The position numbers and the translations under genes are program-made. Of a DNA stretch of 64,000 nt, positions 19,337 through 48,243 are shown piece after piece (the first letter of the stretch is position 1; every line of letters begins with the position of its first letter). The notes under the pieces are model-generated. The model was not told where the DNA came from and made no database searches. It saw only the letters and a list, made by a program, of their open reading frames with translations. Location: positions 186,001 to 250,000 of IMG/VR virus record IMGVR_UViG_3300023179_000009, one strand, 5' to 3'.

Positions 19337-19575
19337 AATCATATAGTTTGATAATTTTAGTTTTTTTGTCTATTTTTTTTGGATGTTCTAAATCAGATGT
19401 TGACTTTCAAGATGTAACATCCAACTATAAACTTCCCCCAGAGTTGAAAGGTGCTAAAATTTTTGTTCTAGGTGGCGGCTGGTCTGCGACAAAGCCTGTG
19501 TGGATTGTTGTTACTCCCAAAAACTCTGATTTTGAAGCAATAACAGAAGATAATACGGCGGAGATCGTTCCTTGA
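19333..19575 (+). CDS. putative lipoprotein
   Basis: Signal-like N-terminus ending FFGC. Confidence 0.55.
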   Translation: MKSYSLIILVFLSIFFGCSKSDVDFQDVTSNYKLPPELKGAKIFVLGGGWSATKPVWIVVTPKNSDFEAITEDNTAEIVP

Positions 19576-20336
19576 AAATCATAGCCGAAATTATAGGTGG
19601 TAGTCACCTTTATGGTCTCGACACTCCTTCTTCGGATGTGGATAAACGTGGTGTTTTTTTAAATACGGAATTTGACAAAATTTTGGGGTTGAATCGATTT
19701 GATGTTTTGAAGCAATCCTCCGAAGATTCACTTTATTTTGAACTTGTTCATTATCTGAGAGGCTTAAAAAAAACAAACACGCAAATGCTTGAAATTTTGT
19801 TTGCTGATGAAGATGATTTTATTCTCATCACAGATGAGTTCAAAGAAATTCGCAGTCACAAGTACAATTTAATAAATAGCGAAAGTTTCTATAAAAGTTT
19901 ATTGGGATATATTGAAAACGAAAAAAGATTAGCAAACGGAGAAAGAACAGGCAGCTTGGGAAGCAAAAGAAAAAACACAATAGAATCTTTTGGTTTTAGC
20001 CCTAAAAACTTTTCTCATTTATTTAGACTTTCTTTTTGTGGTCAAACTTTTTTTGAAACAGGTGTTTATCCGGTTAATATAAGTAAAATCGACAAACAAT
20101 TTCGTGATCTTATTTTTTCCATCAAAACAGAACCCGAGAAATATAATAAAGATTATTTGAACATGATGTGCGACAAATCACTTCAAAAATTGTCTATTTC
20201 TTTTAAAAATAGGAAAGAAAATTTTGAATTCGATGTTGATTTAGCTAATGAATTTTGTAGAAAATTTTATCTTCCTTTTTTGGGAAAAAACACCAATCTG
20301 GCTATTGACAAAAAAAATAAAATAATTAATATATAG
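19572..20336 (+). CDS. Pol-beta-superfamily nucleotidyltransferase (RlaP-like)
   Basis: GGSHLYGLDTPSSDVDKRGVF (hG[GS]x9-13DxD); K..SHL.RL. Confidence 0.85.
   Translation: MKIIAEIIGGSHLYGLDTPSSDVDKRGVFLNTEFDKILGLNRFDVLKQSSEDSLYFELVHYLRGLKKTNTQMLEILFADEDDFILITDEFKEIRSHKYNLINSESFYKSLLGYIENEKRLANGERTGSLGSKRKNTIESFGFSPKNFSHLFRLSFCGQTFFETGVYPVNISKIDKQFRDLIFSIKTEPEKYNKDYLNMMCDKSLQKLSISFKNRKENFEFDVDLANEFCRKFYLPFLGKNTNLAIDKKNKIINI
20305..20332 (+). promoter_or_regulatory. sigma70-like promoter for candidate sRNA
   Basis: TTGACA-16 nt-TAATAT. Confidence 0.55.
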
Positions 20337-20339
20337 ATT

Positions 20340-20492
20340 TATTGCCAGTAAGGGTTAGTTGTTGTGTCGCCCCTTGCTGGTTGTTAGATGTTGTCAACTT
20401 ACCGGCAAAGTTGACCGCTGTTTAGCCGGTTAACAGCGTTACGTCCCCCACCGGGTGGAGAACCTCGTCCCTTCTCCCCGGTGGGGTTTTTT
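20340..20492 (+). ncRNA. candidate four-hairpin small RNA ending in an intrinsic terminator
   Basis: Hairpins 20344-20381, 20393-20415, 20416-20438, 20446-20486 followed by T6; GC-rich island in AT-rich DNA. Confidence 0.6.
20446..20492 (+). terminator. Rho-independent terminator
   Basis: CCCCACCGG...CCGGTGGGG + TTTTTT. Confidence 0.75.
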
Positions 20493-20506
20493 GTTATAAT
20501 ATTTCT

Positions 20507-21448
20507 ATGAGTTGGCAAAAAAAAATAAAATTATTGCGATCTGGCGATTATGAAAGTGGTTGGCCAGAACATAATGATATTGTAGTAGGAACTGGGAATA
20601 ATATTTTTTCTTTGAGTCCGAATTACAACAAACCTGTTTGGAATGGGCAAAAAGAAAATATTACATTATTGATTGATGCTCTTTTTGGCGATGGCGACAC
20701 CATACAGTTTCTTAGATTTGTTGAAAATGCTAAAAAATTAGTTAAAAAAGTAATTTTGCGTTGTAATGAAGAATTTAAAATTTTGTTTCAAGATTTAGAG
20801 GTAGTTGATAAGCAAAAGCAACCTCCTGATTTCGATAAAGTTATTCACATGATGGCTTTACCTAAAGTTTTAAATATTAAAAAAAATGAAATAAAAGGTA
20901 TGCCATATTTGCTTCCAAACTCTTCCGTTACTTTAAACCCGGCAATTCAAGTTTTACCTTTGTTAAAATTTCCAAAAGTAGGAGTCTGCTGGTCCGGTAA
21001 TCCATTTAATGCTCTTGATTATAAAAGATCAATACCAGTTAACTTGCTAGACATTTTGAATATTCATGAAAATTTTAAATTTTTTAGTTTATGTAGAATT
21101 TTTGATCCTCCAAAAAATTGTTTCGATTATCGAAATGCAATGACAGACTGGAACCAAACAGCACACCTAGTTAAAAGTATGGATTTGGTAATCACTGTGG
21201 ACACATCGATAGCTCATCTAGCGGGGTCTATGGGTGTGAAGACTTGGCTTTTGTCGGACCCTGAAGTTGGCGAATGGAGGTGGGGAGATGATCAAAAAAC
21301 AATTTGGTACGATAGTTTACAAATACTTAGAAAGAAAGACGACTGGCAAACTTTACTCTTGGAGGTGAGCGAAGATATAAAAATATTTTTAGAAGATTAT
21401 CAAAAAAATAAAAAAAGAATGCGTTTGCAAACCATCAGCCGTTCTTGA
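20507..21448 (+). CDS. GT9-like (GT-B) glycosyltransferase, TPR-less form
   Basis: GDGDTIQFLRF, VGVCWSGNP, DLVITVDTSIAHLAGSMG, WRW, WYDS. Confidence 0.85.
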   Translation: MSWQKKIKLLRSGDYESGWPEHNDIVVGTGNNIFSLSPNYNKPVWNGQKENITLLIDALFGDGDTIQFLRFVENAKKLVKKVILRCNEEFKILFQDLEVVDKQKQPPDFDKVIHMMALPKVLNIKKNEIKGMPYLLPNSSVTLNPAIQVLPLLKFPKVGVCWSGNPFNALDYKRSIPVNLLDILNIHENFKFFSLCRIFDPPKNCFDYRNAMTDWNQTAHLVKSMDLVITVDTSIAHLAGSMGVKTWLLSDPEVGEWRWGDDQKTIWYDSLQILRKKDDWQTLLLEVSEDIKIFLEDYQKNKKRMRLQTISRS

Positions 21449-21457
21449 GTCTTTTAT

Positions 21458-21805
21458 TTAGTTTTTTTTCAAAACTTTGTTTTTGATTTCTGCTTCTTCA
21501 ACTCTTGAACTCTTTAGTAGCCATTCTAGAAGATTGTTTTTTTCTCTTCTTGTAAAGAGCGTTATTTCATATTGATTATTTGTTTTATCAACCTGACGTA
21601 TTTCTTTGAGTCGGCAATCTACAGGTACGATCTGCTTTAAAGCAAAAAAGGGATCCTCATTATCTTTTAGACTCACCACAACTTTGATTTCTTGTTGAGC
21701 AAATTCGTTATATCCTATTGTTCCCAGCGTAACTAATAAAGCGAGACACGCAATTCCCGCCAGTATTTTGTCCAACACAATATTTAACTTTATTTTATTT
21801 ATCAT
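21458..21805 (-). CDS. hypothetical membrane-anchored protein
   Basis: N-terminal TM; AAGGT SD. Confidence 0.65.
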   Translation of the reverse strand: MINKIKLNIVLDKILAGIACLALLVTLGTIGYNEFAQQEIKVVVSLKDNEDPFFALKQIVPVDCRLKEIRQVDKTNNQYEITLFTRREKNNLLEWLLKSSRVEEAEIKNKVLKKN

Positions 21806-21848
21806 AATCTACCTTTTAATTATTTATCACTAATTTCATAAATATTGT

Positions 21849-22307
21849 ATGTCTTCCTTCAAAGAATTTAATAATTTTATTGACCTCATAATAAATGAGT
21901 TTGATAACAATCAAACTCAGTCAAATCAATTATCACCGCAGCAGCAAAATATTGAAGTTGAAGAAAAACCCTGGTCTGCTAAAAAAGCAGAGATTCTTAG
22001 GTTTTGGAAAGCACTCAAACCTGATATGCCCATAGTTATCCACCCCATGACAGAAAAACCCGAAGGTGTCGAACGATCAAGTTATGGAGAAGACGGAATA
22101 AGAATCTCAGGATCCTATGAGTTTATAATTTCTGTACTTGGGAAATTAAAACAAATTTTGACTTATGAAAATCCAAACACAAGACTAAGACTCATCTTTA
22201 GATCTGTTGACCGCAGCAAATTATTGGTGCCCAATAAAAGGTCATATGTATTTTATATTAATTTAGAAAATAGATCCAAGAAAAGAAAAAGAAAAAATAT
22301 AATCTAA
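21849..22307 (+). CDS. hypothetical protein, probable virion/internal protein
   Basis: MSSFKEF...INE N-terminus; CATAAATA just upstream. Confidence 0.65.
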   Translation: MSSFKEFNNFIDLIINEFDNNQTQSNQLSPQQQNIEVEEKPWSAKKAEILRFWKALKPDMPIVIHPMTEKPEGVERSSYGEDGIRISGSYEFIISVLGKLKQILTYENPNTRLRLIFRSVDRSKLLVPNKRSYVFYINLENRSKKRKRKNII

Positions 22308-22322
22308 AAACTAATATATTCT

Positions 22323-22526
22323 ATGCTTATACAAGATATTAAAAAATTAAGTGATGATTTGGTTGATTTTGAAAAAGATATCAACAACATCTCTGTGAAT
22401 GTTGTTGTTAAAGATGGACAAAAGCCCTCAGATCTTTTGCAGAAAATAAAAAAAATGGGCTACGCAGCTTTCCTTAGAGCAGATGCTTTTGGTATCGAAG
22501 TCGTTATTACTGATTCTTTGAATTAA
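22323..22526 (+). CDS. hypothetical protein
   Basis: Leaderless ORF after ACTAATATA. Confidence 0.55.
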   Translation: MLIQDIKKLSDDLVDFEKDINNISVNVVVKDGQKPSDLLQKIKKMGYAAFLRADAFGIEVVITDSLN

Positions 22527-22609
22527 TTTTTAAATCGATACACGATTGAATAATCTCTGCGATTATTTATCATAAATATATCGTATAAAAAGAGAATCAT
22601 ATACAAGAT

Positions 22610-23359
22610 TTATCTTTGCGTAAAATTTTCATAATCTCCCCAGGATGGGGATTTCATGGATGGTTTTGCATGATGCAAAAGAGGCAAGGATGCCTCAATT
22701 TTTTTTGCAATAACTAAAATATAACTTCTATTTGCTTTTAATTGATAATTTTTATTTTCTTTTTTTATATTAATTTTTTCGAGATAATCTTCAATGTATT
22801 TTGTGTTAGAAAATTTTTGTTTATAATTTTCTTCCTTTATTTCTACCTCAAATTTTGAAAAATATTTAAATATTTCTTGTTTAGAAAAAAATATTTTTTC
22901 TCTAGTTTTTAAATTTAATAAATTATTTAAATCATTTTTTTCTTGAATTCTTAATATTGCTGATCCGTTTGGGCTTAGTCTATTGGTGAAAATATCAGCC
23001 ATACAATTTAAATCAACATAATCTTTCCTGATAGCGCAATCGCTCACTATCACATCAAATGATTTATTTATCTCGCCCCACAGATTTGGATCACCAAAAT
23101 CCCCACACACAAAATCAATCGAAGCATTCGACTCAGAAGCTTTTTCAATTAAACTCTTACATAAATCTATTCCATAAACTTTTTTAAATAACGGTTCAAT
23201 GTATTTTGTTAACCTACCACCAGCACAACCTAAATCAATCGCAATTGATTTTTTGTTTTGGTGTTTTTTGATTGCTTCTTGAAGAATTTTTGGAACTTTA
23301 GTTTTTTTTAACCAATATTGCTCGTCAAGATTTAAGCCATTGGTGGTCGATTTTTCCAT
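22610..23359 (-). CDS. class I SAM-dependent methyltransferase
   Basis: IDLGCAGG, YGIDL, FDVIV. Confidence 0.85.
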   Translation of the reverse strand: MEKSTTNGLNLDEQYWLKKTKVPKILQEAIKKHQNKKSIAIDLGCAGGRLTKYIEPLFKKVYGIDLCKSLIEKASESNASIDFVCGDFGDPNLWGEINKSFDVIVSDCAIRKDYVDLNCMADIFTNRLSPNGSAILRIQEKNDLNNLLNLKTREKIFFSKQEIFKYFSKFEVEIKEENYKQKFSNTKYIEDYLEKINIKKENKNYQLKANRSYILVIAKKIEASLPLLHHAKPSMKSPSWGDYENFTQR

Positions 23360-25494
23360 TTGAAAAAACTATCCGAGTAATGATCGGCTATACGTTTGGC
23401 AATTTCTTTGCCAACCTCCGGTCCCGGTTTTGATAATCCTAATTCTTTTTGTATTTCTTCGCCATTATATTTTGGCATTTCATATTGTCCCAAATGATGC
23501 AGGTGGTCCTTATCGACATCATCGTGTGTTATATGACGAGAACGTGACAATAAATCAATTCTATTTGGCTTTTTAGATATTTCTTGGGCAACCCTACTCA
23601 TCGATTCAGGCGAGGGTTTTTTTGCTGCTTCCCAAGATTTTAAAATAAACGCCACGCCGTCACTCACCTCGTTTGGCCATTCTAGTTTATTTAATTCTGA
23701 GCGAATTTTATCTGGAGATCCGTTTTTTCTCAACAACAAAGCAAGAACTAGAACGGCATGATTGAATCCATTCGTTTTCGTTTGGTGAATTTCTTCGTGA
23801 TTCAAACGATCAACCGATTCCATGTCTAGTTCCATTCCTGGGAACACAGTTGACAGCAGACCCAAAGATTCATAATTTTTTAAATATGAAACCGTATCAG
23901 CAGATTTTTTGAGTCCACTCCAAAATTCTGCTTGTATACGTGGGCCTGTAACGCCATGATTTCTCATGTCTTTATATTGATCTATAGCATCCAGTGTTGA
24001 TTGATCTAAAACGCCCCTTATGTCATCATTGTTATAATAAGAGTGGAAACGAGGAATTCTGGCAATTCTAAGTTTGTCTTCTCCTATCCTTTCAAAAGGA
24101 TCGCCAATCATTCTAACTCGCCAATTTTTGATATCTTCAAATCCTTGACCGCCGCTTGGATCAACAAAAACACCTTCTTCATTGGGCGATGCTGGAATTT
24201 GATAATAAATAGCATTCATGGTTAGATCACGACGCTTGTAATCTGTGTGCATATCTGCCCACCGAACTTTATCAGGGCGACGACCATCGCTATACCCCAA
24301 GTCTTCACGAAAAGTTGCTATCTCGTAATCTTCCCCATTTATGTTTGCAACCATCACTCCAAAAGATTTACCTTTATCAAAATTTTTAATTCCGGCTCGG
24401 TTTAACATATCCTCTACTTGATCCGGAGTCGCATCTGTTGTTAGATCTATGTCTTTTGTTTTGTTTGTATCAAAAGGTTCATCGGGTTTTGTAAAATAGT
24501 GTCTTAAAAAGTCTCTTGGGGCTCCGCCGATTACGTATATCTGGTGTCCGTTTTCTTTAAAAACTTTTGCCAAAGTAAAAACATCTTTTTCCAAAGGTAG
24601 TCTTGCCCTTATTTCGTGTTCTGTTGCTTCTATGAATGTTTTAAATCTTATTCTCGATTCTCCCAGTAGATTTTTAATATCTTCATCATTTAAATTTGGA
24701 AATCTGCCTTTTAAAGCTGATTTGATTATTTCATTAGATTTGCCTTTTTCACGCATGTTTGCAACAAAGCCAACAGGGTCATTAGACATAGGCTTGCTTG
24801 CACGAGCAGATATTTTATCAAGATCTTTTTTATACAAGTGTGCGGTGGTGTCTATACCGCCTAGTCCTTTCTCCGCTGCTGGTGTGTTGCTTTGGGCAAA
24901 TTGTTTTGCTTTTTGCCAAGGTATTCTGCTTTCCCCACCACGGCCCATTCGATCCATCAATAAAAACACCAATAACAATTTAATTTTACGATCTGATTTG
25001 TATTTCCCTTGATCATCTAATAATTCTTTTTTAAGCGATTTGTTTTGAAAACCTTGTTCATCCTTGAGGCTCATGTGGTATTTTATAACCCACCATAAAT
25101 CTTCTTTATCAATCGAGTTGGCTTTGCTGTACATGTTATGCCACGCTGGTCCTAGTCTTTGCATGGCTTTTTCAAAGTTCGCTGGATCTTCATGACCGTG
25201 GGCACTTAACGTTTTCGGATCTAGTGTGTCGCCCTTACCTATATCGTGCAGCAAACCAGCAAGACGCAATATATTCACATCTTCTGAGGTAAAACTTAAA
25301 TCGAGATTAGACAATGGACCATTTGGGTCGTCTTTTTGTTTTTCTTGTAAAATTTTTATAGCTGGCTCCAATGCCGAACGCACCATCATTGTGTGGCGAT
25401 CCACAGACCCTTCGGGGTGGTGCTTAGGATTTTGTGGTACTTTTAATTGTTGTCTCAGCGAGGATTCAACAAGCCATTCATTAAAACTTTTCAT
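23332..25494 (-). CDS. cca: N-terminal HD domain fused to class II tRNA nucleotidyltransferase (CCA-adding/poly(A) polymerase family)
   Basis: HD: HHPEGSVDRHT, LLHDIGK, HM, D. NTase: IGGAPRD, DIDL, EIATFRED, DGRRP, RRDLTMNA, EDKLRIAR. Confidence 0.88.
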   Translation of the reverse strand: MKSFNEWLVESSLRQQLKVPQNPKHHPEGSVDRHTMMVRSALEPAIKILQEKQKDDPNGPLSNLDLSFTSEDVNILRLAGLLHDIGKGDTLDPKTLSAHGHEDPANFEKAMQRLGPAWHNMYSKANSIDKEDLWWVIKYHMSLKDEQGFQNKSLKKELLDDQGKYKSDRKIKLLLVFLLMDRMGRGGESRIPWQKAKQFAQSNTPAAEKGLGGIDTTAHLYKKDLDKISARASKPMSNDPVGFVANMREKGKSNEIIKSALKGRFPNLNDEDIKNLLGESRIRFKTFIEATEHEIRARLPLEKDVFTLAKVFKENGHQIYVIGGAPRDFLRHYFTKPDEPFDTNKTKDIDLTTDATPDQVEDMLNRAGIKNFDKGKSFGVMVANINGEDYEIATFREDLGYSDGRRPDKVRWADMHTDYKRRDLTMNAIYYQIPASPNEEGVFVDPSGGQGFEDIKNWRVRMIGDPFERIGEDKLRIARIPRFHSYYNNDDIRGVLDQSTLDAIDQYKDMRNHGVTGPRIQAEFWSGLKKSADTVSYLKNYESLGLLSTVFPGMELDMESVDRLNHEEIHQTKTNGFNHAVLVLALLLRKNGSPDKIRSELNKLEWPNEVSDGVAFILKSWEAAKKPSPESMSRVAQEISKKPNRIDLLSRSRHITHDDVDKDHLHHLGQYEMPKYNGEEIQKELGLSKPGPEVGKEIAKRIADHYSDSFFKWKNRPPMA

Positions 25495-46639: not shown

Positions 46640-47881
46640 CTACCCACCCGCTAAAGACGGGTGGGTTTCCGCTCCAACCAACAGCCCACCATAAGCGGGT
46701 CTTACATCAGGACAAGCGGCTAACTCGGTAGTTCCTACCGTTCTGTATTTTACTCCTTCGTCAAGTATATTCAAGGCTGCGTTTTGGTCACGGTCAATAT
46801 TTTCAAAACAGTTGAAACAAAACCATTCCCTATCGGTTGGTTTTAGTTCTTTGTTTTGAAAACCACAATTATTGCAAAGTTGACTTGATGGAAAGTATCT
46901 GTCAACCTTGATTAATTCACGACCATACCACTTCGCCTTGTAGGTCAATTTGTCAACAAAAGAGCGAAACCCACAATCGGCAATGTCTTTATGTCTGTTG
47001 CGTTCTTGATATCGTTTTTCTTCTCTTTTGTCGGGACTAACCTTTTTAAGCATGGATTCTACGCTCAAGTCTTCAACAATTATCACTTGGTTTTCGTTGA
47101 TGATGCGTCGTGTTAACTTGTGTAGAAAATCTTCACGCTTGTTGGTTATCTTCAAATGTAGTTTAGCCAACCTTCGGTTGGCTTTCTTCCTGCCATTACT
47201 TCCTTTTTCGCTTCGGCTCACACTTTTACTCAAAAGTTTAAGTCTTTGTTCGTACTGTTTCATGGGTCTTGGATTTTGTATCTTGTTGCCATTACTGTCC
47301 ACTATATTTTTTACATTAAGGTCAAATGCAATTACTTCCGACGAAGTCGGCAAACTAGAAATTTCTTTTTGAACAGTGACTGAAACGAAGCATTGTCCAA
47401 CTTTGTTTTTGCTTATTGTTGCAAACTTGATTTCGCCACTAAATTCACGGTCTTGAACAAAGTTGATTCCCGACAAGAACTTGGGGAAACAGAGTTTCTT
47501 GTCTTTGATTTTGATGTTCTGCTTTACTCGGAATGATTGTTTGTCATTTCTACGCTTGAATTTTGGGAAACCTTTTTTGCCCTTATTCTTTTGTTTGATC
47601 TTACGAAAAAAGTTGTCATACGCTGTTTGCAAACATTCAACTGCATATTGCAAACTTTGACTTCCTACTTCTTTCAACCAAGGATGGTCTTTCTTTAGAT
47701 TCGGAAGTTCTTTTTCGTTGTCTTTTCTACTTATTGACTTTTTACTGTTTTTGTATTCTTGTATTCGCTTATACAAAAAATGGTTGTACACGAACCTCCC
47801 GCAACCGAAGTGCTTATTCAGCAACGATTCTTGTTGTTTGGTTGGATACAACCTAAATTTGTAGGAATACAGATGGTTCAA
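46640..47881 (-). CDS. tnpB: TnpB RNA-guided endonuclease
   Basis: YKFRLYPT HTH, IAFDLN, VEDL, DRDQNAA, zinc finger CNNC...CFNC. Confidence 0.94.
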   Translation of the reverse strand: MNHLYSYKFRLYPTKQQESLLNKHFGCGRFVYNHFLYKRIQEYKNSKKSISRKDNEKELPNLKKDHPWLKEVGSQSLQYAVECLQTAYDNFFRKIKQKNKGKKGFPKFKRRNDKQSFRVKQNIKIKDKKLCFPKFLSGINFVQDREFSGEIKFATISKNKVGQCFVSVTVQKEISSLPTSSEVIAFDLNVKNIVDSNGNKIQNPRPMKQYEQRLKLLSKSVSRSEKGSNGRKKANRRLAKLHLKITNKREDFLHKLTRRIINENQVIIVEDLSVESMLKKVSPDKREEKRYQERNRHKDIADCGFRSFVDKLTYKAKWYGRELIKVDRYFPSSQLCNNCGFQNKELKPTDREWFCFNCFENIDRDQNAALNILDEGVKYRTVGTTELAACPDVRPAYGGLLVGAETHPSLAGG

Positions 47882-48027
47882 TTGTCCTCTTTGGTGTAGT
47901 TGACCATGAAATCACGGACTACTTCGCTTATTGTTTTGTAGTTTTCTTCACACTTTTTTTTGAATTGCTCAAACAATGATGGTTGAACACGAATCAGCAT
48001 ATCTTTTTCTTTGTTCTCTTTGCTCAT
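47878..48027 (-). CDS. ribbon-helix-helix (CopG-like) protein, 49 aa, not in ORF track
   Basis: MSKENKEKDMLIRVQPSLFEQFKKKCEENYKTISEVVRDFMVNYTKEDN*; stop overlaps the TTG of tnpB. Confidence 0.75.
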   Translation of the reverse strand: MSKENKEKDMLIRVQPSLFEQFKKKCEENYKTISEVVRDFMVNYTKEDN

Positions 48028-48147
48028 ACATTGTATATAGTGTGCCAGAACTGATTTTTGAACCGAATTTTAGGGGAATCGTTGAAAAAGACATGGGTTC
48101 TTACTAAATTATGACTATACGGCGATTCATCCCGCTACCCTAAAGAG

Positions 48148-48198
48148 GTTTGCCTATTTTGCTCGTTCGCTATCGCTCACGATCTGCAATAGGCAAAC
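48148..48198. repeat. palindromic insert within the IS left-end hairpin
   Basis: Perfect 11-bp inverted repeat GTTTGCCTATT/AATAGGCAAAC around TTGCTCGTTCGCTATCGCTCACGATCTGC. Confidence 0.7.
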
Positions 48199-48243
48199 TT
48201 TCTACGAAAGTAGGGGCGTTCTCGCCACAGGAAAGGTAAAAAG

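What the first reader, a model, noticed from the sequence alone, without database searches (positions are those of the whole stretch)
20305..20492. Stand-alone four-hairpin sRNA with complementary loops and an alternative fold
Seen: TTGACA/TAATAT promoter, about 150 nt of GC-rich hairpins and a strong terminator. The downstream gene has its own TG-n-TATAAT. The loop of hairpin 2 (ACCGGC, 20401-20406) is the exact complement of the loop of hairpin 3 (GCCGGT, 20425-20430). The stems abut with no linker, which may favour intermolecular kissing, as in phi29 pRNA hand-in-hand oligomers. The 5' strand TTGCCAGTAAG can pair with either CTTGCTGG (20373) or CTTACCGGCAA (20398), a switch-like arrangement. 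It lies directly after the RlaP-like nucleotidyltransferase. I do not recognise the family.
Basis: partly seen in the sequence, partly recalled or inferred. Interest (0 to 1): 0.65.

Follow-up and report, generated by a model that had tools for sequence, protein, structure and literature searches.

The report
New structured RNA in huge phages
A roughly 155-base RNA gene in a 459-kb freshwater phage folds into a three-way junction plus a long hairpin, and related phages keep that shape through compensating mutations, so it is a real, undescribed RNA family whose job is still unknown.

Summary
Window 20305-20492 carries a TTGACA-16-TAATAT promoter, about 155 nt of GC-rich structure and a strong intrinsic terminator. 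It matches no Rfam family and is single-copy in a 458,813-bp phage record.

I found seven further homologues in three clades. Across the eight sequences, 26 of 49 base pairs change on both sides while 96.8% of cells stay paired; shifted registers give 40-50%. The conserved core is a closing stem with two hairpins (H2, H3), then hairpin H4. Hairpin H1 is variable.

Three loop motifs are invariant:
- CCGGC in the H2 loop
- GCCGG in the H3 loop, its complement
- CGUCCC in the H4 loop

- The 5'-strand "switch" costs 10 kcal/mol and is not conserved.
- RlaP adjacency is not universal.

A GT9-like glycosyltransferase gene lies downstream on the same strand in all eight loci.

Best reading: in this lineage it is a separately transcribed structured RNA that works through its fold and loops, probably by binding a protein. 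It is unlikely to be a seed-pairing sRNA or a riboswitch. Expression is untested. Whether the loops pair within one molecule or between molecules is open.

The parts
20305..20332 (+). Sigma70-type promoter: -35 TTGACA (20305-20310), 16-nt A-rich spacer, -10 TAATAT (20327-20332). The predicted start is near 20337-20341.
   Evidence: The hexamers are visible. The block is conserved across the four clade-1 variants. In two of them (L002, L065) the RlaP frame already stops at the TGA inside TTGACA, so the rest of the block is non-coding there yet still conserved. The same promoter type is enriched in intergenic DNA of this genome and sits 8-52 nt before genes.
20325..20336 (+). AT-rich block ATTAATATATAG (consensus roughly AATAYATRG) at the 5' edge of the RNA in every homologue.
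   Evidence: Seen in the alignment of upstream regions and as AAATACATGG in G030. The motif is unique to this locus in the genome. Whether it is the -10/start region or the 5' end of the RNA is not settled.
20344..20381 (+). H1: an 11-bp hairpin with a 16-nt G/U-rich loop. It is the variable domain.
   Evidence: Folds. The stem covaries: 7 of 11 pairs change on both sides. Sequence, length and the G/U-rich loop are not conserved, and H1 is absent in G030.
20387..20445 (+). Three-way junction: closing stem P (20387-20391 with 20441-20445) enclosing H2 and H3.
   Evidence: Folds. P changes on both sides at 4 of 5 pairs with 100% of cells paired. The junction strands are 1-2, 0 and 1-3 nt long and vary in sequence.
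20393..20415 (+). H2: 8-bp stem with loop ACCGGCA (20401-20407). CCGGC is invariant.
   Evidence: 7 of 8 stem pairs change on both sides. The loop motif is invariant in 8 of 8 sequences.
20416..20438 (+). H3: 7-bp stem with loop UAGCCGGUU (20423-20431). GCCGG is invariant and is the complement of the H2 loop motif.
   Evidence: 3 of 7 stem pairs change on both sides. The loop motif is invariant in 8 of 8 sequences. The loop-loop duplex is -11.6 kcal/mol.
20446..20492 (+). H4: 10-bp lower stem, 2-nt bulge, 5-bp upper stem, 9-nt C-rich loop containing CGUCCC, then U6. It is both a conserved domain and an intrinsic terminator.
   Evidence: -26.3 kcal/mol. The sequence is nearly invariant across clades, with compensatory C-G to U-A changes in L068 and L017 and a C-G to G-C change in G030. 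The loop CGUCCC is present in 8 of 8. The U-tract is present in 7 of 8 and missing in G030.
20492..20509 (+). Extended -10 element TGnTATAAT (20492-20500) and the ATG (20507) of the GT9-like gene, which implies a leaderless or near-leaderless mRNA.
   Evidence: Sequence. It is conserved in the four clade-1 variants. Other promoters of this genome lie 8-11 nt from their ORFs, and only 37% of genes have an SD-like motif.
19599..20336 (+). Upstream RlaP-family nucleotidyltransferase gene. Its 3' end overlaps the promoter.
   Evidence: Pfam PF10127 at E 8e-11 and PHROG nucleotidyltransferase at E 5e-25. The 245-aa form is the one seen in relatives.
20507..21448 (+). Downstream GT9-like glycosyltransferase gene. 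It is the only neighbour shared by all eight RNA loci.
   Evidence: Weak Pfam GT9 match. Its homologues are the C-terminal domains of TPR-glycosyltransferases. It lies downstream on the same strand in all eight loci.

Best explanation
This is a gene for a small structured non-coding RNA of a family not described before, carried by a lineage of freshwater and marine huge phages.

Shown or strongly supported:
- In the window's lineage it has a promoter of the host sigma70 type, inside the end of the RlaP gene, and ends at H4 plus a U-tract. This predicts an RNA of about 155 nt.
- The selected part is a core of about 100 nt. A short closing stem carries two hairpins of 7-8 bp, and a long bulged hairpin (H4) follows directly.
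- H1 in front of the core is a variable accessory hairpin.
- The H2 loop motif (CCGGC), the H3 loop motif (GCCGG) and the H4 loop motif (CGUCCC) are invariant.

Inferred mechanism:
- The two complementary loops pair with each other and lock H2 and H3 side by side into a compact fold.
- That fold, together with the sequence-conserved H4, is a recognition surface for a protein partner. The partner is possibly tied to the always-linked GT9-like gene or to the phage's RNA-repair genes.
- The RNA does not act as a single-stranded seed pairing with mRNAs, as a small-molecule riboswitch, or as a two-state switch.
For: Structure:
- Fold z = -4.97.
- 8 homologues in 3 clades were found with covariance models.
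- 96.8% of cells are paired against 40-50% for shifted registers. 26 of 49 pairs change on both sides, and 0 of 500 shuffles reach this.
- Single-sequence folds give the same architecture in 7 of 8 sequences.
- Many G.U pairs fit only the + strand.

Separate transcription unit in clade 1:
- TTGACA-16-TAATAT is conserved even where it is non-coding.
- The same promoter type is enriched in intergenic DNA: about 20 of 63 sites fall in 7.6% of the genome. One such promoter drives another RNA gene.
- The terminator is strong, and the next gene has its own extended -10 element.
- In L068 and L017 the RNA faces a convergent gene, so it is not that gene's leader.

Works by fold and loops rather than by a seed:
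- The loops and H4 are invariant while stems, H1, linkers and junction strands vary.
- H2 and H3 keep similar lengths in all clades.
- No target in the phage genome stands out.

New family:
- No Rfam match at E<=10.
- Single copy in its genome.
- Two conserved H4-region patterns gave no match in 185,579 prokaryote species genomes.
Against: - No transcript was seen. The one RNA library holding this phage has contigs only on neighbouring genes, which proves nothing either way.
- Clades 2 and 3 lack a good -35 hexamer. G030 lacks the U-tract and H1 and lies 20 nt before a gene start inside an apparent operon, which looks cis-acting.
- The covariation alignment was fitted to the model, and the eight sequences form only three clades. 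A MAFFT alignment recovers only H2 and H4.
- Loop-loop pairing cannot be tested by covariation because neither loop varies. Their invariance could equally mean that each loop binds something else.
- No partner protein is identified.
Confidence: 0.5

Rival explanations
1. It is a cis-acting leader or intercistronic element that controls the downstream GT9-like gene cluster. The conserved fold would be bound by a factor, or by RNA polymerase, and would set how much transcription passes H4 or how the next gene is translated.
For: - A GT9-like gene lies downstream on the same strand in 8 of 8 loci, although the upstream gene differs: RlaP in seven, a histidine phosphatase in G030.
- RlaP-carrying phages that lack this GT9-like gene next to RlaP lack the RNA.
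- In 6 of 8 loci the core ends 15-30 nt before a start codon.
- G030 has no U-tract and no obvious transcription unit of its own.
Against: - In L068 and L017 a convergent gene separates the RNA from the GT9-like gene.
- Clade 1 has a separate extended -10 promoter for the GT9-like gene.
- No alternative pairing competes with H4. With the H4 3' strand blocked the best fold loses 20 kcal/mol and forms no conserved anti-terminator. H4 stem changes in L068 and L017 are not matched by loop changes.
- The junction nucleotides are few and variable, so there is no conserved ligand pocket.
- Part of the GT9 linkage comes from how the loci were found.
Confidence: 0.25
2. It is a self-assembling RNA. H2 and H3 stack end to end, their loops point in opposite directions, and CCGGC of one molecule pairs with GCCGG of the next.
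For: - The loops are complementary and invariant in 8 of 8 sequences.
- There is no linker between H2 and H3 in 7 of 8 sequences. By the usual rules for three-way junctions (my own knowledge) that favours coaxial stacking.
- Both loops contain the palindrome CCGG.
Against: - pRNA loops covary between relatives, whereas these do not vary.
- G030 has mismatches or a 5-nt linker at the base of H2.
- The equal lengths of H2 and H3 also fit side-by-side packing.
- The ends of the RNA do not pair as pRNA's do.
- No oligomer data exist.
Confidence: 0.1
3. It is only an elaborate terminator and 3'-end stabiliser for the upstream operon, with no function of its own.
For: - It follows a long run of + strand genes.
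- H4 is a strong terminator.
- Stable GC-rich hairpins protect 3' ends (my own knowledge).
Against: - Terminators do not keep invariant loop sequences or a covarying three-way junction across clades whose flanking proteins are 42-65% identical.
- G030 keeps the fold without a U-tract.
- A conserved promoter sits directly in front of the RNA.
Confidence: 0.07
4. It is a two-state RNA switch that alternates between the H2 + H3 fold and one long hairpin in which the two loop motifs pair as an ordinary helix.
For: The alternative fold lies only 1.1-3.7 kcal/mol above the minimum in clade 1, and 4.2-7.4 kcal/mol above it in clade 2.
Against: - The covariation supports H2 and H3, not the helices that flank the alternative pairing. 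Those helices differ from sequence to sequence.
- The energy gap grows in the other clades.
Confidence: 0.05

Closest known systems
phi29-family packaging RNA (pRNA)
   Same: A phage-encoded RNA of 120-170 nt built around a three-way junction, with two loops that are complementary to each other.
   Different: - No match to any Rfam family at E<=10.
- pRNA's 5' and 3' ends pair into a helix; here the ends are H1 and a terminator hairpin.
- pRNA loops covary among relatives, but these are invariant.
- pRNA is known only from small phi29-like phages, while these genomes are 240-540 kb.
- Oligomerisation is untested here.
Purine-riboswitch type 'tuning fork' aptamers (closing stem, two parallel hairpins, loop-loop pairing, then a terminator)
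   Same: A closing stem with two hairpins of 7-8 bp whose loops can pair, followed directly by an intrinsic terminator and a gene.
   Different: - The junction strands are only 0-3 nt long and vary in sequence, so there is no conserved pocket.
- No conserved anti-terminator exists.
- No Rfam match.
- H4 is conserved in sequence, unlike an expression platform.
C4 antisense RNA of phages P1 and P7 (my own knowledge)
   Same: A small structured phage RNA whose function resides in two hairpin loops.
   Different: C4's loops pair with two sites in a downstream mRNA of the same operon. Here the two loops complement each other, and no matching target pair was found nearby.
HK022 put RNA and the Bacillus EAR element (cis-acting anti-termination RNAs; my own knowledge)
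   Same: Adjacent hairpins in a nascent phage or polysaccharide-operon transcript, lying upstream of terminators and of glycosyltransferase-type genes.
   Different: There is no evidence here of read-through or of action on RNA polymerase. The RNA ends at its own strong terminator in 7 of 8 loci.
Bacterial Y RNA (YrlA) with Ro/Rsr
   Same: A non-coding RNA in a phage that also carries RNA-repair genes. This genome does encode a TROVE protein.
   Different: The TROVE gene is 45 kb away and has its own tRNA-like RNA next to it. This RNA has no terminal stem, no tRNA-like module and no Rfam match.

Membership tests
Any Rfam 15 family (4227 models) | A covariance-model match at or near the gathering score | tested here: not met
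   There were no matches at gathering score over the whole window. At E<=10 over 20100-20700 the best overlapping match was PrrF at 17 bits against a 90-bit threshold.
phi29 pRNA | The 5' and 3' ends pair into a terminal helix that closes the three-way junction | tested here: not met
   The ends are H1 and H4. The junction is closed by an internal 5-bp stem.
phi29 pRNA | Two loops that pair between molecules to form rings | not testable with these tools
   The complementarity exists and is conserved. Whether pairing is within or between molecules needs gels or scattering.
Purine-type three-way-junction riboswitch | Closing stem, two hairpins of similar length, pairing loops | tested here: met
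   P is 5 bp, H2 is 8 bp, H3 is 7 bp, and the loops are complementary over 5-6 nt.
Purine-type three-way-junction riboswitch | Conserved junction nucleotides that form the ligand pocket | tested here: not met
   The junction strands are 1-2, 0 and 1-3 nt long. They read U, UU, AU or GG on one side and UU, AAU, AUU or A on the other.
Riboswitch or attenuator in general | An alternative pairing that competes with the terminator | tested here: not met
   Blocking the H4 3' strand costs 20 kcal/mol and yields no conserved helix. H4 stem changes are not accompanied by changes elsewhere.
Intrinsic (Rho-independent) terminator | A GC-rich hairpin directly followed by a U-tract | tested here: met
   -26.3 kcal/mol plus U6 in the window. 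U5-U7 is present in 7 of 8 homologues and absent in G030.
Sigma70-type promoter | -35 and -10 hexamers at 16-18 nt spacing, conserved in relatives | tested here: inconclusive
   It is a good match (10 of 12 hexamer bases) and conserved in the four clade-1 variants. Clade 2 keeps only TAATAC and has no good -35. Consensus matches in this AT-rich DNA occur at the chance rate overall.
Seed-pairing (Hfq-type, GcvB-like) sRNA | A conserved single-stranded seed region | tested here: not met
   The G/U-rich H1 loop and linker are confined to clade 1. No phage target exceeds background. The phage has no hfq.
Y RNA / YrlA | A terminal stem from paired ends, a tRNA-like module, and a gene next to rsr | tested here: not met
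   None of the three is present. The TROVE gene is 45 kb away with its own tRNA-like neighbour.
IS200/IS605 end or TnpB guide RNA | Lies at the end of a tnpB element, or is repeated in the genome | tested here: not met
   It is single copy. The TnpB element in L012 is inserted after the terminator and shares no sequence with the RNA.

The most novel reading that the evidence does not exclude
The RNA is a self-assembling scaffold. Its two invariant, mutually complementary loops sit at opposite ends of a stacked H2-H3 rod and join molecules hand in hand into rings or filaments. That would be a pRNA-like principle in huge phages, outside the phi29 family. An equally novel alternative is that the fold is a new class of protein- or ligand-sensing control element for a phage glycosyltransferase cluster.
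Probability: 0.12. Interest if true: 0.85.

Novelty: new variant of a known kind. Interest (0 to 1): 0.55.

Why it matters
- Few structured RNAs are known from huge phages beyond tRNAs, tmRNAs, introns and CRISPR RNAs.
- This candidate has a small, well-defined core of about 100 nt. Its stems are supported by compensating changes, and three loop motifs stay fixed while everything around them drifts.
- That pattern points to a specific molecular partner and makes the RNA easy to test by structure probing, loop swaps, gel shifts and oligomer assays.
- Its constant linkage to a glycosyltransferase gene, in a neighbourhood of RNA-repair genes, gives concrete candidates for that partner.

Tried and rejected
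**Ideas tested and dropped**
1. G/U-rich H1 loop and linker as GcvB-like seeds. They are not conserved outside clade 1.
2. Targets in the phage genome. Duplex energies of six exposed segments, and of the joined H1-loop-plus-linker stretch, against 636 translation-start regions stay within background. The top hits lie in a high-GC block.
3. It folds at -51.6 against -61.9 kcal/mol and is lost in L065 and the other clades.
4. H2 or H3 loop as an anti-terminator against H4. H4 changes in L068 and L017 without any loop change.
5. Y RNA. The TROVE gene is elsewhere and has its own tRNA-like RNA.
6. Mobile element, IS end or repeated promoter-hairpin cassette. The RNA is single copy and the upstream motif is unique.
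7. tRNA or tmRNA. None found.

**Searches that found nothing new**
8. A loop pattern and two H4 patterns in IMG/VR found only the known relative plus chance hits.
9. A linker pattern in JGI metagenomes found only the window's own contig and one chance hit.
10. The two H4 patterns in 185,579 prokaryote genomes found nothing.
11. Whole-record model searches of 28 more distant IMG/VR records that carry RlaP found nothing.
12. Model searches of the other fetched loci with RlaP or GT9 homologues (L014-L016, L067, L069-L076) found nothing.
13. Four further records with distant GT9 homologues also had no match.
14. No close relative of G030 is in IMG/VR.

**Inconclusive**
15. Expression. One freshwater metatranscriptome holds two small contigs of this phage, on RlaP and on the minus-strand ORF at 21458-21805, but none on the RNA. 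These are contigs only, so this shows nothing either way.
16. MAFFT plus RNAalifold recovers H2 and H4 but misaligns H3 and P, because loop lengths differ between clades.
17. Whether the RNA is among the 10,006 unnamed candidates of Fremin et al. 2023 (PMC10690425) could not be checked. No supplement is held.

Full report
**Setting**

The window is bases 186001-250000 of a single 458,813-bp IMG/VR virus record. The record has 34.9% GC, 12 tRNA genes and a CheckV completeness of 91%. Near-identical DNA occurs in freshwater and lake metagenomes. Relatives about 93% identical occur in runs labelled seawater.

The genes are densely packed and phage-like. They include HNH, DUF551 and TnpB genes and a set of RNA-metabolism genes:
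- RlaP at 19599-20336
- an FtsJ-like methyltransferase at 22610-23359 (-)
- a 720-aa HD plus CCA-adding-type enzyme at 23332-25494 (-)

**The observation**

- The + strand from 20335 to 20495 folds at -61.9 kcal/mol with z = -4.97.
- The fold is H1 (20344-20381), then a 5-bp closing stem P (20387-20391 with 20441-20445) that encloses H2 (20393-20415, loop ACCGGCA) and H3 (20416-20438, loop UAGCCGGUU).
- H4 follows directly (20446-20486, -26.3 kcal/mol) and is followed by U6.
- There is no Rfam match, even at E<=10, no tRNA or tmRNA, and no second copy in the genome.
- Outside a high-GC block far away, this is the most GC-rich intergenic stretch of the genome.

**Promoter and neighbours**

Sigma70-like consensus matches in this AT-rich region occur at the chance rate: 32 found against 29.6 expected. 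The hexamers alone therefore prove nothing. Three further observations support the promoter.
- The block from TTGACA to the TAG is conserved in the four close variants. In L002 and L065 the RlaP frame already ends at the TGA inside TTGACA, so the rest of the block is non-coding there. Just upstream, the coding sequence carries an 11-nt indel.
- Genome-wide, about 20 of 63 TTGAC[AT]-N15-18-TAnnnT sites fall in the 7.6% of the genome that is intergenic. Most of those sit 8-52 nt before a gene on the same strand. One sits 7 nt before a tRNA-like RNA gene.
- The GT9-like gene's TGnTATAAT lies 6 nt before its ATG. That fits this genome's habit of very short leaders and weak Shine-Dalgarno use: 37% of genes have an SD-like motif against 11.5% background.

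**Finding relatives**

DNA patterns taken from the loops, the linkers and H4 found only one IMG/VR relative, G001 at 177 kb.

Following the flanking proteins was more productive.
- RlaP homologues led to near-identical RNA copies in L012 and L013.
- RlaP homologues of 66-69% identity (L014, L016) have no spacer after the gene and no RNA.
- GT9-like homologues led to L065, L066 and L068.
- A covariance model run without filters then found diverged copies in L065, L066 and L068. It also found one in L017, a locus first fetched through RlaP. Scores were 63-182 bits.
- A second model found a third clade in IMG/VR record G030 at 39.5 bits, E about 1e-9.
- Twenty-eight more distant IMG/VR records with RlaP have no match when searched whole, and neither do four records with distant GT9 homologues.
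- Twelve other fetched loci with RlaP or GT9 homologues also lack it.

**Covariation**

The figures below come from the eight sequences.

| Measure | Result |
|---|---|
| Cells forming standard pairs | 96.8% |
| Same, with partners slid 1-3 columns | 40-50% |
| Pairs changed on both sides | 26 of 49 |
| Shuffles reaching the observed values | 0 of 500 |

| Helix | Pairs changed on both sides |
|---|---|
| H1 | 7 of 11 |
| P | 4 of 5 |
| H2 | 7 of 8 |
| H3 | 3 of 7 |
| H4 | 3 of 15 |

- The three H4 changes are clean C-G to U-A or G-C swaps.
- Numerous G.U pairs would be A.C mismatches on the other strand, so the + strand RNA is the selected molecule.
- Caveats: the alignment was fitted to the model, and the eight sequences form three clades. 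A MAFFT alignment recovers only H2 and H4.
- Independent single-sequence folds give the same architecture in seven of the eight.

**What is conserved**

- Variable: H1 (sequence, length and, in G030, presence), the linkers, and the junction strands.
- Invariant: CCGGC in the H2 loop, GCCGG in the H3 loop, CGUCCC in the H4 loop, and most of H4.
- An AT-rich block, roughly AATAYATRG, marks the 5' edge everywhere. It is unique to this locus in the genome.

- The pairing of the H1 5' strand with the H2 loop region costs 10 kcal/mol and is not conserved.
- A different alternative replaces H2 and H3 with one long hairpin in which the loop motifs pair. It lies only 1.1-3.7 kcal/mol above the minimum in clade 1 and 4.2-7.4 kcal/mol above it in clade 2. 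Its flanking helices are not conserved, and the covariation supports H2 and H3.
- No pairing competes with H4. Blocking its 3' strand costs 20 kcal/mol, and H4 stem changes are not mirrored in the loops.
- The junction has no conserved unpaired nucleotides. A purine-riboswitch-type pocket is therefore excluded, although the overall architecture is similar.
- Intermolecular kissing cannot be tested here. The zero-length linker that motivated it is not kept in G030.

**Context**

| Loci | Upstream | Downstream |
|---|---|---|
| Clade 1 (window, L002, L013, L065) | RlaP | GT9-like ATG 15 nt after the U-tract |
| L066 | RlaP | GT9-like gene with an SD about 30 nt after the U-tract |
| L068, L017 | RlaP | convergent small membrane-protein gene, then GT9-like gene |
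| G030 | histidine phosphatase gene | NADAR gene, then GT9-like gene; no U-tract |

- RlaP is therefore not the constant neighbour. A GT9-like gene downstream on the same strand is present in 8 of 8 loci.
- Two GT9 homologues of 50-54% identity lack the RNA.
- Part of this linkage reflects how the loci were found.
- RlaP itself adds one or two nucleotides to damaged RNA 3' ends during tRNA repair (PMC12776372) and is common in jumbo phages (PMC7824862). Nothing links it directly to this RNA.

**Conclusion**

The RNA family and its fold are well supported. In the window's lineage it is most likely a separate transcription unit. Conservation is concentrated in three loops and one hairpin, with free drift elsewhere. 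That argues for a fold-dependent function with a specific partner, and I take a protein as the likeliest partner. The two complementary loops most simply pair with each other.

A cis-regulatory role for the GT9-like cluster is the main rival. Expression, the partner and the oligomeric state all need experiments.

Noticed in passing
G000:C1:159864-161634 (loci L063, L064), about 45 kb before the window: A 547-aa open frame with a TROVE (Ro/Rsr) domain has its own TTGACA-type promoter. It is followed by a second such promoter and an 88-nt tRNA-like gene. Aragorn calls that gene tRNA-Thr, and Rfam's tRNA model scores it 43.7 bits with a 21-nt insertion in the anticodon loop. It is a likely phage Ro plus YrlA-type Y RNA pair. 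The genome has no RtcB and no Hfq.
   Followed up: partly
L012:3446-4832 (JGI contig whose RlaP is 97% identical to the window's): A TnpB (OrfB_IS605 / Cas12f-like) element is inserted 9 nt into the GT9-like gene, just after the RNA terminator. It is flanked by a duplicated ATGAGTTGG, which leaves the gene start intact. The RNA is untouched.
   Followed up: partly
window 46640-48243: A 413-aa TnpB gene lies on the minus strand (Pfam OrfB_IS605, TNB and HTH domains). A structured GC-rich end region at 47882-48243 resembles, in reverse complement, the left end of the element inserted in L012.
   Followed up: partly
G000:C1:118122-118553 and 122787-123454 (outside the window): Two intergenic stretches share long blocks that look like group I intron cores. 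They were judged by eye only and not run against Rfam.
   Followed up: no
G000:C1:322000-359000 (outside the window): A block of about 37 kb reaches 73% GC inside a 35% GC genome. It has a recurring motif, close to CTAGTTGGTATC, in front of many of its genes. It may be a foreign insert, a different expression module or an assembly chimera.
   Followed up: no
L065:1841-2793 (501-kb JGI contig): The GT9-like gene is called as three pieces of 68, 198 and 76 aa, while the RNA just upstream is intact and covaries in H1. This is either frameshifts or sequencing errors.
   Followed up: no
window 19572-25494: A cluster of RNA-metabolism genes surrounds the RNA: DUF5662, RlaP, an FtsJ-like methyltransferase and a 720-aa fusion of an HD domain with a CCA-adding-type nucleotidyltransferase. 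Relatives carry PTH2 near RlaP.
   Followed up: partly
whole genome G000: Sigma70-type promoters lie only 8-11 nt before several ORF starts, and only about 37% of genes have an SD-like motif. This suggests many leaderless or near-leaderless mRNAs in this phage.
   Followed up: partly
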